Source: Blastocystis sp. Blastoise (lineage: Eukaryota; Protista; Bigyra: Opalinata). From it: a stretch of DNA of 64,000 nucleotides. Under the pieces are notes generated by a model. That model saw only the letters and a list, made by a program, of their open reading frames with translations, made no database searches and was not told where the DNA came from. Below are positions 27,160-32,141 of this stretch, in pieces; position 1 is the first letter of the stretch, and each line of letters opens with the position of its first letter. A program made the translations under genes and the position numbers. Location of the stretch: assembly GCA_039096225.1 (NCBI GenBank), contig JBBPEB010000009.1:124001-188000 (forward strand). The letters are read 5' to 3'.

Positions 27160-30100
27160 CTATGTATTATTATTAATATTAGCATTATTATTATTATCTA
27201 CAGTATTTTCTATTGTATTATTATGAATACTAGTAATATCTATAGTATCTATGTTATGTGTTATATTCACATGAGATATGTTATTCATGATTGTGTTCTT
27301 CTGCGTCATAGGATCCAGTTCAGGATGATCTTGTATATAGGATTGATATAAACTAGTTAATTTACTATCGATTGCCTTATCTTTAACAAATATAGTAGTT
27401 GTAGTATTAGTATTCTTATTTATAGTATTATTTGTAGTAGAAGGAGATATATAGATCCAAACAAAAGGATATGCTTGAAGACCAAATGTTTTATACATTA
27501 ACGAATGAAGCAATCCCCATATTTCTCCATTAGTTTCACATATGCTATCAATGGCAAGTGTCATACCATAACTAATAGGAACAGTATTAATAAAGTGTTT
27601 ATGTGTATATATAGAACGGTCGTCAGAAGGGAATATATTCAAAGGACGGGAATAAACAGGTAATGATGTATCTATAGAATAATAAATAGAGTAATAATAA
27701 TAAATAGAATAATATATATATATAATAAATATATACCATTTTGAATATATGTATATAGAAAAGCAGTAATGGGTATAGAAGTATATTGATATTGTGTTGA
27801 GGCAACTACAGAAGCAATAGAATTCCCGTGGGAATCAGACTCTCTAGTTTCAAAGAGAGGGATACGATTAAAAAGTGGGTTAATTTGGAGGGAAGTTAAA
27901 GTTGATGGAGATATATATATATAAGTATTTAAAGGGGTATAGTCTTCATTCTCTACAGTAAATACCGTATATGGAGGAATAGTTGCTTTTACAGTAGTAT
28001 CATCAAGATTACTATCATAACAATTTATGGCTTGTAAAGATACATAAATCTCTTTATTTTTTGTTTCTTGATTTATATTAATATTAATATTCTTATAAGC
28101 AGCTGAAGGACCTTCAGGAGTCACTAGATCAGAATGTTTATCTTCATTTTTGAATATATTAGAATTCTCTCTAGAGAAGAAAGGAGATAACGGTGATGAC
28201 GAGAGCTCTGTCACTAGCCAAGGATGTTCTAGCATCTATAGAAATATATTAATATGTTTAATAATATACTAATAATACAATTATAATATAATAATAATAA
28301 TAATAATAATATGTTAAAATTATAATACAATAATAATATGTATAATAACATAATAATAATAAAATTATAATATAATAATAATAATGAATACTTGTTGCGT
28401 GTTCATTCGTTTATCTATATCTACACATATAGTATTACAGATGAATTCCTTTGCATTATCTGATATATTATCCCAGTAAGGACTGTCGAATGTATATATA
28501 CCCTTTCGAATGCATTTTAGCCGCTGAACCTCATTATTCGATGGAAACGGGGGGTAACCACAGAGAAGTATATAAGTAATAACACCAAGACTCCAGCAGT
28601 CCACTTTTTCGTTGTAGGTAGGGGAATCGCTGAGGATTTCAGGCGCCGTATAACCCGGTGTACCTAGGGCAGTTCGTAAATAACCGCGGGACGTATCGAA
28701 ATGAGAAGCGAATCCAAAATCTGATAATTTCACACTATCCAATTTGTTGGGATCTGAGAGTAGAATATTTTGTGGTTTGAGATCTCTATGAATAATGTTA
28801 CGCTCGTGACAATAATGTACGGCTTTCGTAACGGTTTTCATAATGACACGTGCATCTTCTTCAGAAAATTTCTCTTGTTTAACGATATGGTCAAATAATC
28901 GTCCTCCTTGGGCCAATTCCATAACTATATAATATTTGACTCCATCTGTATAGAAACCATATATATTAATAATATTTGGATGACCACGAAGACGAATCAT
29001 ATTCGATACTTCCTTCTATATATAAATATAATAATAATAATAATAATAATAATAATAAATATAATAACTTATAATAATAATAAATATAATAACTTATAAT
29101 AATAATAAATACCTTTAAAGCTACCTTATCATATTCATCCAATTGATATGCATTGATACACTTAACGGCTACATGATGCACTCCTTCGTCATCATTATCG
29201 ATTGATGTATCTCTAATTTTAGAAACAGCGAGCTGAACTGTGCTGAAATGTCCTGAGCCAATTTGTCTTTCGAATTTATAAATATTATTGATATTAACAT
29301 TTGTAGGAACTAATTCTTCATCTTTAATTTCTATTTTGCCTTGTAGTTTCACTCCCAAATCATTATTATAATTAGTGATGATCGTTATTACTATATATAT
29401 ATAGTAATAATATATATAAATAGAATAGTTATAATATATATATATGTAAATAGAATAATTATATATATATATACCCATAAAAGTAAGAGTATTATTCCAG
29501 ACATCGGGTCGTGTTGCAAATAACTCTTGAATAACTTCTACTAACTTTGTAACTTCTATATAGGTAAGTTTCTTTTTAATTAATAGTTTCTCCAGACGTA
29601 AGAGTAAAAACCATAATTCACTCGGTTTATCACAGGCTGAAAGGCCCTGAATTGATTCATTTAAATAGGACTATATAAGATAGAAGATTAATAGGATATA
29701 ATTTATGAATAAATATATATATATAATATAAAAAAATAATAATAATATACAAAAGATCGAACTGTTTTTACAACTGTATTTTCCTTATAGAGTGAGTTTG
29801 TGTTGTGAGCGAACTGACTGATAATTTGACGGTATTCCTCAATCTCCTTCTTGTCCTCACACGCTAACCAGAAGAATTGATCTGATTTCTATATAAATAG
29901 TAATAATAATAATAATAATAATAATAATAATAATAATAATAATAATAATAATAATAATAATAATAATAATAATAATAATAATAATAATAATAATAATAAT
30001 AATAATAATAATAATAATAATAATAATAATAATATCTCAAATAATAATAATAATAATAATAATAATAATAATAATAATAATAATAATAATAATATCTCAA

Positions 30101-32141
30101 ATAATAATAATAATAATAATAATAATAATAATAATAATAATAATAATAATAATAATAATAATAATAATAATAATAATAATAATAATAATAATAATAATAA
30201 TAATAATAATAATAATAATAATAATAATAATAATAAATACATCTTCTAAGAAAAGACACAAAGGATATTGTCGTGAAGACATGCTATAGAATCTCGATAA
30301 TCGCGGGAATTCAATAGTTCTTCTTAGAGCTCCATTAATAGTAGTAAAATAGCATATACGTCTATTCGTGACTATATAATAACGTGCTTGCCAACCTTCT
30401 TCTAAGACATTCTAAACAGGAAATATATAGAGAATTGAATATATAGTATATTATTGAATAGAATAATATATTATTGAATAGAATAATAGTATATTATTGA
30501 ATAGAATAATAATATATTATTGAATAGAATAGAATATATAGTATATTATTGAATAGAATTATAGTATATTATTGAATAGAATATATATAATATATATACT
30601 CTTCTTAGTAGATATCCTTCTTTGAAAACGATTTCTTGTTCATCCATTTCACTAGATATAGGCAATAAGGACATCTGTACTAACATCACATCCTTATATA
30701 TATCTTCTTCTTCTCCTTCTGATTTCTTCTGCCCATGACGAATGGGTAATTGACCTATATAATTAATAATAATAAACATAATAAACATAATAAACATAAA
30801 AATAATAAACATAATAAATACTTTTAAAAAGACGTTTTCCTCTAAAAACCATGTCTCTTAATTGTTCTTGACCCTTGTGAGCTATATAATAATATAATAA
30901 ATATAATAATAATATATACTATAAAAGAATTATAAAAATACTTTTATTTGCTTGTTCTAATTTAGTCATACATAAAGATTTCAAATCTGTATTCTCAGTC
31001 AATTTCTTTTCTTTTATCTATATATATATAATAATAATTTATTTTTATAATAATTAAAATTATAATAATTAAAATTATAATAATTAAAATTATTATTATT
31101 ATTATTATTATTATATATATATATATACTTGTTCCATTAATGTTTCCATGGGGTCAATAGAATCCGAATTACGAACTTTAGACTTTGAAGATGAAATAGA
31201 CGTACGACTCAAATAATATAATGTCTATATATATTATTTACATAATAAATATAATATATAAATAAAAAATATAAATAAAAAATATAAATAAACAATATAA
31301 ATAAACAATATAAATAAATAAATAAATATAAATAAATAAAACAATATAAATAAATAAACAATATAATATAAATAATAATAATACTTGGATCATATCCGAT
31401 AGATCTTCTTGTTCCTGTATATCATAGAAGGGACTGGATACGACTAATTTCATAAACCCTTCTCCAGCATTACTTCCTGTCATCTTATGCATCTTCTTTA
31501 TTATCTTTCGAAGACCACTATAATTAAGTGACGCAAATTTCTTTAATAATTCCATTCGTCCATATAAATTGAAAATCTCATTTGGAAGAGGGTTTTTTCG
31601 ACAAAATGAAAAGAAATGCTTTGTAGTTAAGTGATGTTTCACTCTATCATATAACACATCATATTCATGTCGAATATCGGTCATTTCCTTATTGTAATAT
31701 TGATTAATAGCAATCAAATCCTCATTCACAGTCTCCATGAATCTATTCAAATAATATAAAATAATAAGAGTGCTTCTAAAACAATGAATTGCCTTATCTT
31801 CAAACAATTCACTGTTTTATAAATAATAAATCATATATACAAAATAAAACTTTTGTTTCCTTCAAGAGATACAACGTCTTGTGGCGTTCTCATATCTTTT
31901 TCTTCTGTTGGTTGCTCAACTTGATTCGAATCTTCTTCTTTCTTGTCAGTCTCTTCTTTTTCTTTGTCAGAATTATCATCATCACCTTTATTTCCAGCGA
32001 ACTGTTTTATATATTTCTTTAATATCTTATATTTCACACAAGCCCTCATACCTTCAGCATCAAATGAAAGCATTTCCTCTCTAAAATTATTTATATAGAT
32101 AAAAGATATGAATCTTACTCTAACGTTTTTGCAAATCTCAT
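27160..32141 (-). CDS. SPX-PH-CaMK-type Ser/Thr protein kinase, about 14 exons
   Basis: SPX: MRFAKTL..., VKYKILKKYIK, LNYSGLRKIIKKMHK. PH: FKEGYLLRR..EGWQARYYIV. Kinase: IGSGHFSTV, VAVK, HRDLKPQN, DFG, GTPGYTAPE, DCWSLG. A single frame was traced across GT-AG introns. Confidence 0.85.
29901..30235. repeat. Intronic (AAT)n microsatellite with two ATCTCAA interruptions
   Basis: Seen directly; explains the polyY, polyL and polyI ORFs. Confidence 0.95.

What the first reader, a model, noticed from the sequence alone, without database searches (positions are those of the whole stretch)
27160..32141. SPX-PH-CaMK kinase fusion: a candidate one-protein inositol-pyrophosphate/phosphate-sensing kinase
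Seen: one frame links an N-terminal SPX domain (about 32141-31385), a PH domain (about 30640-29760) and an intact kinase (about 29290-28200). The SPX ligand residues (YKxLKK and KxxKKxxK) are retained. Established: SPX binds PP-InsPs and is normally alone or fused to EXS, MFS, RING, VTC, CitMHS or ANK/GDPD domains; a catalytic kinase is not among these classes. Inference: direct coupling of phosphate status and phosphoinositide binding to phosphorylation.
Basis: partly seen in the sequence, partly recalled or inferred. Interest (0 to 1): 0.8.

Follow-up and report, generated by a model that had tools for sequence, protein, structure and literature searches.

The report
SPX phosphate sensor fused to kinase
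The gut protist Blastocystis has a protein, kept across the genus, that joins a known sensor of the cell's phosphate messengers (an SPX domain) to an intact protein kinase; I found this pairing nowhere else, and if the sensor controls the kinase it would turn phosphate status directly into protein phosphorylation.

Summary
Real, but a 14-exon gene, not 'one frame'. The window is tortoise Blastocystis sp. Blastoise; the gene is NCBI WA158_000460 (KAK8809517.1, 'hypothetical', 1131 aa). It matches my independent exon model from exon 2 onward, using a longer intron 2, but lacks a conserved first exon (true length about 1141 aa). Order: SPX - conserved linker - PH - helical bundle - CAMK1-like kinase - two probable bacterial-type SH3 repeats. 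Four other Blastocystis lineages carry the same gene with 28-37-nt introns at shared positions, the 3'-end motif absent between SPX and kinase, and all six SPX ligand residues and the catalytic motifs kept. SPX-less PH-kinase-SH3 paralogs exist, so SPX was probably added to that chassis. The genome encodes PPIP5K, two IPKs and ITPK1. No SPX+kinase protein turned up outside Blastocystis or in the papers searched (searches not exhaustive). The calmodulin-binding tail is not recognisable, so 'CaMK' describes the catalytic domain only. Ligand binding is inferred from conserved residues; control of the kinase in cis is a hypothesis (about 0.5). The scan's index held no other finding of this fusion.

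The parts
32119..32141 (-). Exon 1 (start codon, SPX helix-1 start, MRFAKTLE-type); missing from the NCBI model
   Evidence: Same 23-nt exon and phase-2 intron in L016, L019, L022, L027
31841..32080 (-). Exon 2: SPX N-terminal helices with Y-K-x-L-K-K (32031-32014), then an acidic insertion
31385..31742 (-). Exon 3: SPX core with the lysine cluster K-x-x-K-K-x-x-K (31507-31484). An alternative acceptor at 31811 would add 23 codons; orthologs and NCBI favour 31742
   Evidence: Pfam SPX E 1.5e-11; hits to SPX1/SPX2, XPR1, Vtc4 structures; intron position q78 shared
30633..31224 (-). Exons 4-6 and most of 7: linker with two motifs invariant in five lineages (LRDxxxRGxR and DxMxxQM)
   Evidence: predicted helices at low confidence
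29793..30632 (-). PH domain split over exons 7 (end), 8 and 9; intron 8 (30240-29889) is a 352-nt TTA repeat
29341..29771 (-). Small helical bundle (about 90 aa) between PH and kinase, also present in the SPX-less paralogs; no family assigned
   Evidence: AlphaFold pLDDT about 93; alignment; not tested alone in fold search
28215..29280 (-). CAMK1-like Ser/Thr kinase (exons 11-13) with Gly loop, VAVK lysine, alphaC Glu, HRDLKPQN, DFG, activation-loop Thr and APE
   Evidence: Pkinase E 2.9e-70; best solved match human CaMK1 E 3e-65; motifs conserved in orthologs
27423..28073 (-). Probable tandem pair of bacterial-type SH3 (SH3b) repeats
   Evidence: No Pfam hit here; weak SH3_3 hits in paralogs (E 1e-5 to 0.01); alignment; Atlas feature hits to SH3_3/SH3_5 at 0.92-0.93
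27160..27422 (-). C-terminal tail, low complexity, ending in a genomic TAG stop
   Evidence: matches the end of P0001

Best explanation
One gene encodes an approximately 1141-aa cytosolic kinase: SPX - linker - PH - helical bundle - CAMK1-like kinase - 2x SH3b. It probably arose before the split of tortoise- and mammal-type Blastocystis, by adding an SPX domain and a new linker to the front of a Blastocystis PH-kinase-SH3b kinase. Most likely the SPX domain binds InsP6/PP-InsPs made by the cell's own IPK/ITPK1/PPIP5K enzymes and, as in other SPX-enzyme fusions, controls the attached catalytic module in cis. By analogy with VTC the kinase would be switched on when phosphate is plentiful. PH would add membrane targeting or a second inositol-phosphate site, SH3b would dock partners, and the activation-loop Thr may need an upstream kinase. 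SHOWN: exon structure, domain order, conservation, ligand and catalytic residues, presence of the ligand-making enzymes. INFERRED: ligand binding (strong), kinase activity (strong), cis control and its direction (moderate to weak), substrates (unknown; the SPX-EXS exporter and the SPX-cytidylyltransferase of this genome are candidates).
For: Exon model equals the public protein at every junction from exon 3 to 14; that annotation pipeline chose RNA-seq-supported introns (PMC12129017). Orthologs L016, L019, L022, L027 (GC 35-59%) align collinearly over SPX, linker, PH, helical domain and kinase with 28-37-nt introns, many at the same protein positions and phases as here. The Blastocystis 3'-end motif TGTTTGTT is absent between SPX and kinase in all nine ortholog loci scanned and flanks the gene in L019 and L022. 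Linker and first PH strand share one exon in all five lineages. All 6 ligand residues are invariant, against 45 of 144 SPX columns and 3 of 11 other lysines. The five kinases form a 100/100 clade. PPIP5K, IPK x2 and ITPK1 genes are present. An RNA-type run holds 0.46 of the sampled words of 30241-32400, close to the 0.44 expected if all exons there are expressed; SPX exons alone would give 0.25.
Against: The spliced aligner can bridge an artificial frameshift by inventing an intron, so a stop-free path is not proof by itself. No biochemical data. The full-length model was unusable (pLDDT 32), so no SPX-kinase contact is shown. Full-length annotated orthologs from human subtypes were not found in the protein searches. 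In other proteins SPX often works in trans or by SPX-SPX contacts.
Confidence: 0.5

Rival explanations
1. SPX is a ligand-gated docking module: PP-InsP makes it bind partners (other SPX proteins such as the SPX-EXS exporter, or a transcription factor) and so brings a constitutive or separately activated kinase to its substrate, without allosteric control.
For: Plant SPX-PHR and yeast Pho81 or Vtc2-Vtc3 work through ligand-dependent protein contacts (PMC9286782; PMC10167327 abstract). About 230 residues plus PH lie between SPX and kinase. Three other SPX proteins are in the genome.
Against: The linker carries invariant motifs specific to the fusion, which suggests a fixed intramolecular interface. 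No partner is identified.
Confidence: 0.3
2. The SPX site holds InsP6 as a constant cofactor or has a minor role; the kinase is governed by PH-lipid binding and an upstream CaMKK-type kinase and is not a phosphate sensor.
For: SPX domains also bind InsP6 (PMC9911596). Activation-loop Thr is conserved. No VTC gene was found, so a canonical SPX output is missing in this organism.
Against: PPIP5K is retained. All six ligand residues are invariant over deep divergence.
Confidence: 0.13
3. Two neighbouring genes (a stand-alone SPX gene and a PH-kinase gene) are merged by gene prediction, a known Blastocystis artefact where stop codons are made by polyadenylation.
For: SPX-less paralogs begin exactly at the PH domain. 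Merging of adjacent genes is a documented annotation error in this genus. Direct read evidence was not obtained.
Against: Tortoise isolates keep genomic stops and have about 650-720-nt intergenic gaps; there is no stop or gap here. No 3'-end motif between the domains in any ortholog. The conserved linker runs into PH strand 1 within one exon in five lineages.
Confidence: 0.05

Closest known systems
[quoted passage not shown]
   Same: N-terminal SPX with the PBC and KSC ligand residues in front of an effector module
   Different: The effector is a Ser/Thr kinase with PH and SH3b. No kinase class is listed in the SPX surveys read (10.1101/2021.08.24.457498, PMC12388464, PMC8233357)
Fungal Pho81 (SPX-ankyrin-GDPD) with Pho80-Pho85
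   Same: PP-InsP binding to an SPX domain controls a protein kinase (PMC9286782)
   Different: Pho81 inhibits a separate CDK-cyclin in trans; here sensor and kinase are one chain and the kinase is CAMK1-like
Blastocystis PH-helical-CAMK1-SH3b kinases (WA158_005082, WA158_005656, and an ST4 'calcium/calmodulin protein kinase', P0131)
   Same: Align over residues 317-914/1036, from PH to the SH3b region
   Different: No SPX or linker; they keep an NxxRR-type segment after the kinase; separate clade whose sister relation to the SPX kinases is not resolved
CaMK1 (human CAMK1/1D/1G) and oomycete PH-CAMK1 kinases
   Same: Closest catalytic domains (about 45% identity)
   Different: Matches end at the kinase C-lobe; the calmodulin-binding tail is not recognisable; no SPX
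Akt/PKB and PDK1
   Same: PH domain on a kinase; IP7 competes with lipid at the Akt PH domain (PMC9286782)
   Different: AGC kinases, no SPX

Membership tests
SPX domain (PF03105) | Profile score above the curated cut-off | tested here: met
   45.4 bits for exon 3 and 34.2 for P0001 against a cut-off of 27.8
SPX domain (PF03105) | PBC (Vtc4 Y22, K26, K133) and KSC (K129, K132, K136) residues, as given in PMC9911596 | tested here: met
   P0001 Y15, K19, K161 and K157, K160, K164, invariant in five lineages
SPX domain (PF03105) | N-terminal position with an M-K/R-F/Y-G/A-K start | tested here: met
   Exon 1 in the window and four orthologs
SPX domain (PF03105) | Binds InsP6/PP-InsPs | not testable with these tools
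   needs a binding assay
PH domain | Seven-strand sandwich plus C-terminal helix | tested here: met
   AlphaFold pLDDT about 90; VIA Z 15.8, rmsd 1.4 A over 96 residues. Pfam score alone is below cut-off
Phosphoinositide-binding PH domains | Basic K-Xn-(K/R)-X-R motif in strands 1-2 (from my knowledge) | tested here: inconclusive
   Last Arg (R336) and R326 invariant; the middle basic residue is Lys in L019/L022/L027 but Gln here and His in L016
Eukaryotic Ser/Thr protein kinase (active) | Gly loop, VAIK Lys, alphaC Glu, HRD-K-N, DFG, APE | tested here: met
CaMK1 (calmodulin-regulated) | CAMK1-like catalytic domain | tested here: met
   Best solved matches are CaMK1, E 3e-65
CaMK1 (calmodulin-regulated) | C-terminal autoinhibitory and calmodulin-binding segment | tested here: not met
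   CaMK1 alignments stop at the kinase end; the tail is not conserved between this gene/L016 and the other orthologs. Judged by sequence only
Bacterial SH3 (SH3_3/SH3b) | Profile match or SH3 fold | tested here: inconclusive
   No Pfam hit in this protein; sub-threshold hits in paralogs; Atlas look-alikes at 0.92-0.93 with only 112-116 shared features; not folded with an alignment
Described SPX classes (SPX, -EXS, -MFS, -RING, -VTC, -CitMHS/SLC, -ANK-GDPD) | One of these partner domains | tested here: not met
   Only Pkinase and PH found beside SPX

The most novel reading that the evidence does not exclude
A single-chain PP-InsP-gated protein kinase: InsP7/InsP8 binding to its own SPX domain (perhaps also to PH) switches a CAMK1-type kinase that has traded calmodulin control for phosphate-messenger control, making it the central phosphate-signalling kinase of the commonest human gut protist.
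Probability: 0.4. Interest if true: 0.8.

Novelty: new variant of a known kind. Interest (0 to 1): 0.58.

Why it matters
Known SPX control of kinases works in trans through several subunits (Pho81-Pho80-Pho85). A natural one-chain SPX kinase would give a simple in vitro system for asking how PP-InsP binding to SPX changes an attached enzyme, a template for PP-InsP reporters, and the first handle on phosphate signalling in Blastocystis, which has lost many signalling genes (PMC12129017) and shows no VTC gene here. Limits: so far it is confined to one genus, and the regulation is inferred.

Tried and rejected
The single call was counted, so no reads were laid, and those places were sent to no tool afterwards. 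I had left out the 352-nt TTA intron because the tool turns away long repeats. My own spliced model was searched exon by exon only. The joined step was left out: the 1141-aa form with exon 1 has no reference and was neither searched nor folded. Whole-protein work used P0001, the public protein returned. For the local tree, ortholog kinase residues were read off the spliced alignment inside the script and sent to no search tool. Single-sequence AlphaFold of the whole protein failed (pLDDT 32). Word searches with residues 1-520 and with an SPX alignment were capped at 8000 candidates and found no further SPX+kinase protein. The JGI pattern scan found nothing. P0008/P0063 (L025) is an SPX without a downstream kinase call, so it was not counted as an ortholog. 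A PAH-like reading of the helical bundle came from memory only, had no Pfam support and is not claimed. A 29-nt intron 2 was disfavoured by ortholog intron positions. Paper searches for SPX with Blastocystis or with kinase architecture gave nothing relevant; the Blastocystis ST1 and Phytophthora kinome papers do not mention SPX.

Full report
Source. The window is AT-rich (GC about 23%) and lies on contig C3 of a 33.3-Mb, 34-contig genome. A search with the SPX exon returned a 1131-aa protein at 99% identity (P0001), named by NCBI as hypothetical protein WA158_000460 of Blastocystis sp. Blastoise, KAK8809517.1. Size and GC fit the Russian-tortoise isolate of PMC12129017 (33.3 Mb, 23.1% GC); that match is my inference from the numbers.

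Observation. No single reading frame spans the region. Reading the minus strand I built 14 exons, all with GT-AG introns, phase-compatible from ATG 32141 to TAG 27160. I built this before seeing the public model. Every in-frame piece from exon 2 to exon 14 maps in order onto P0001. There are two differences. NCBI starts 10 codons late and misses exon 1, which is conserved with its phase-2 intron in four orthologs. NCBI uses the 98-nt intron 31840-31743, which I now prefer to my first 29-nt guess because orthologs splice at that protein position. The likely product is about 1141 aa. Pfam gives SPX and Pkinase above cut-off and PH below it. AlphaFold of residues 252-530 with a 25-row alignment gives a confident PH fold followed by a confident helical bundle (PH confirmed). 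The C-terminal 200 residues probably hold two bacterial-type SH3 repeats, on weak evidence.

One gene or two. This matters because Blastocystis annotations can merge genes, and because SPX-less paralogs begin exactly at the PH domain (P0129, P0146, P0131). SPX fragments led to contigs of four other lineages (L016-18, L019-21, L022-24, L027; GC 38, 53, 59 and 35%; subtypes not determined). I take them as Blastocystis from synteny, intron size and the 3'-end motif. L016 has the same neighbours as the window (Rad51/DMC1, Band_7, kinesin). In each lineage P0001 aligns collinearly from SPX through linker, PH and helical domain to the kinase, and in three of the four into the C-terminal repeats. Spliced alignment found introns of 28-37 nt, many at the same residue and phase as in the window (q78, 255, 327, 384, 588 in most). 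A control shows that the aligner can hide an artificial frameshift by inventing an extra intron, so the weight lies on intron size and shared position, not on the absence of stops. The 3'-end motif TGTTTGTT is absent between SPX and kinase in all nine loci scanned (L016-L024; L027 was not scanned), and sits just past the gene in L019 and on both sides of it in L022. Linker and first PH strand lie in one exon in all five lineages. The public pipeline selected RNA-supported introns. Two RNA-type runs hold 0.46 and 0.30 of the sampled words of 30241-32400; the first fits expression of all exons there (0.44 expected), but it may be the source sample, may be DNA, and does not show one molecule. I put one gene at about 0.95.

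Function-bearing residues. The SPX PBC/KSC residues defined for Vtc4 (PMC9911596) correspond to Y15, K19, K157, K160, K161 and K164 of P0001. All six are invariant in five lineages, whereas 45 of 144 SPX columns and 3 of 11 other lysines are. The kinase keeps all catalytic motifs and an activation-loop Thr and is closest to CaMK1 among solved structures, with the match ending at the C-lobe. The tail after the kinase differs between this gene/L016 and the other three orthologs and shows no clear calmodulin-binding segment, so Ca2+/calmodulin control is doubtful. The PH basic motif is complete in three orthologs and partial here. The linker has two invariant motifs not found in any other fetched protein. 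The genome has PPIP5K, two IPK-family genes and ITPK1, so the ligand can probably be made; VTC was not found (exon-wise search, absence not proven).

Distribution and origin. The five SPX kinases form one clade (100/100); the SPX-less PH-kinase-SH3b proteins form another (100/99); their sister relation is unresolved. Shared PH-helical-kinase-SH3b anatomy makes addition of SPX to that chassis the simplest account, but loss of SPX in the paralogs is not excluded. Among 83 close kinase relatives of 620-1980 aa only P0001 carries PF03105. The SPX hits of 480-727 aa that I scanned carry EXS, CitMHS or nothing. add no SPX+kinase protein. These searches are limited by length windows, candidate caps and an E-value cut, and Proteromonas could not be tested, so 'Blastocystis-specific' is provisional. 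Full-length annotated orthologs from human subtypes did not appear either, which I cannot explain; they may be split, or missing from the collection.

Mechanism. Best reading (0.5): SPX binds InsP6/PP-InsP and controls the kinase in cis, probably activating it when phosphate is high, by analogy with VTC. Rivals: ligand-gated docking to partners without allostery (0.3), a non-sensing or minor role for SPX (0.13), two genes (0.05). Shown: structure of the gene, domains, conservation. Inferred: binding, activity, regulation, substrates.

Comparison with what is known. It works like SPX-effector fusions and, in logic, like Pho81 acting on Pho85 (PMC9286782). It is a member of the SPX and protein-kinase families, not of any SPX class listed in the surveys read, and should not be filed as a calmodulin-regulated CaMK1. 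The sequence is public as a hypothetical protein; I found no paper describing the architecture (subscription journals are not covered). Verdict: a real, genus-wide, apparently undescribed domain architecture; new variant of a known kind; interest 0.58.

Method note. My spliced model was searched exon by exon by reference; the joined step was left out. Whole-protein searches and folds used the stored public protein P0001.

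Noticed in passing
L040:654-2721 + (G000:C17, about 689153-691220): A second unusual SPX fusion: an 8-exon, phase-compatible 346-aa SPX-cytidylyltransferase gene (CTP_transf_like E 1.7e-7 on one exon) with Y..K and KxxKKxxK retained. It could tie PP-InsP to CDP-activated lipid precursor synthesis. Not searched in other genomes.
   Followed up: partly
G000:C21:357652 (L038) and G000:C22:370235 (L039): Two more SPX genes: one looks like SPX-EXS (XPR1/PHO1 type) by eye; the partner domain of the other was not identified.
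   Followed up: partly
G000 whole genome: No VTC (PF09359) match, while PPIP5K, two IPK genes and ITPK1 are present; this Blastocystis may lack the VTC polyphosphate polymerase.
   Followed up: partly
P0129, P0146 (WA158_005082, WA158_005656), P0131, P0141, P0159: A family of PH - helical bundle - CAMK1-like kinase - twin bacterial-type SH3 proteins; SH3b on a eukaryotic kinase is itself unusual.
   Followed up: partly
window 32141-32119: The NCBI model WA158_000460 lacks the conserved first exon, so the public protein is missing the first SPX helix start; anyone expressing it should add exon 1.
   Followed up: yes
window 30240-29889 and L040:2100-2410: Long TTA-repeat introns in two unlinked genes carry the same short interruption (GAGAT), as an earlier scan note says for this window.
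   Followed up: no
L022:10790-10812: The L022 ortholog seems to have no genomic stop before the TGTTTGTT motif, consistent with a stop made by polyadenylation; L019 has a genomic TAA.
   Followed up: no
L019, L022, L029 upstream of the gene; L016: Gene neighbourhood differs by lineage: L019/L022/L029 have another kinase gene upstream on the same strand (with a tRNA-like stretch between in L019, read by eye), whereas L016 shares DMC1, stomatin and kinesin neighbours with the tortoise isolate, has 30-37-nt introns and shows no TGTTTGTT after the gene, suggesting a basal lineage in metagenome assemblies.
   Followed up: no
Not checked.
   Followed up: no
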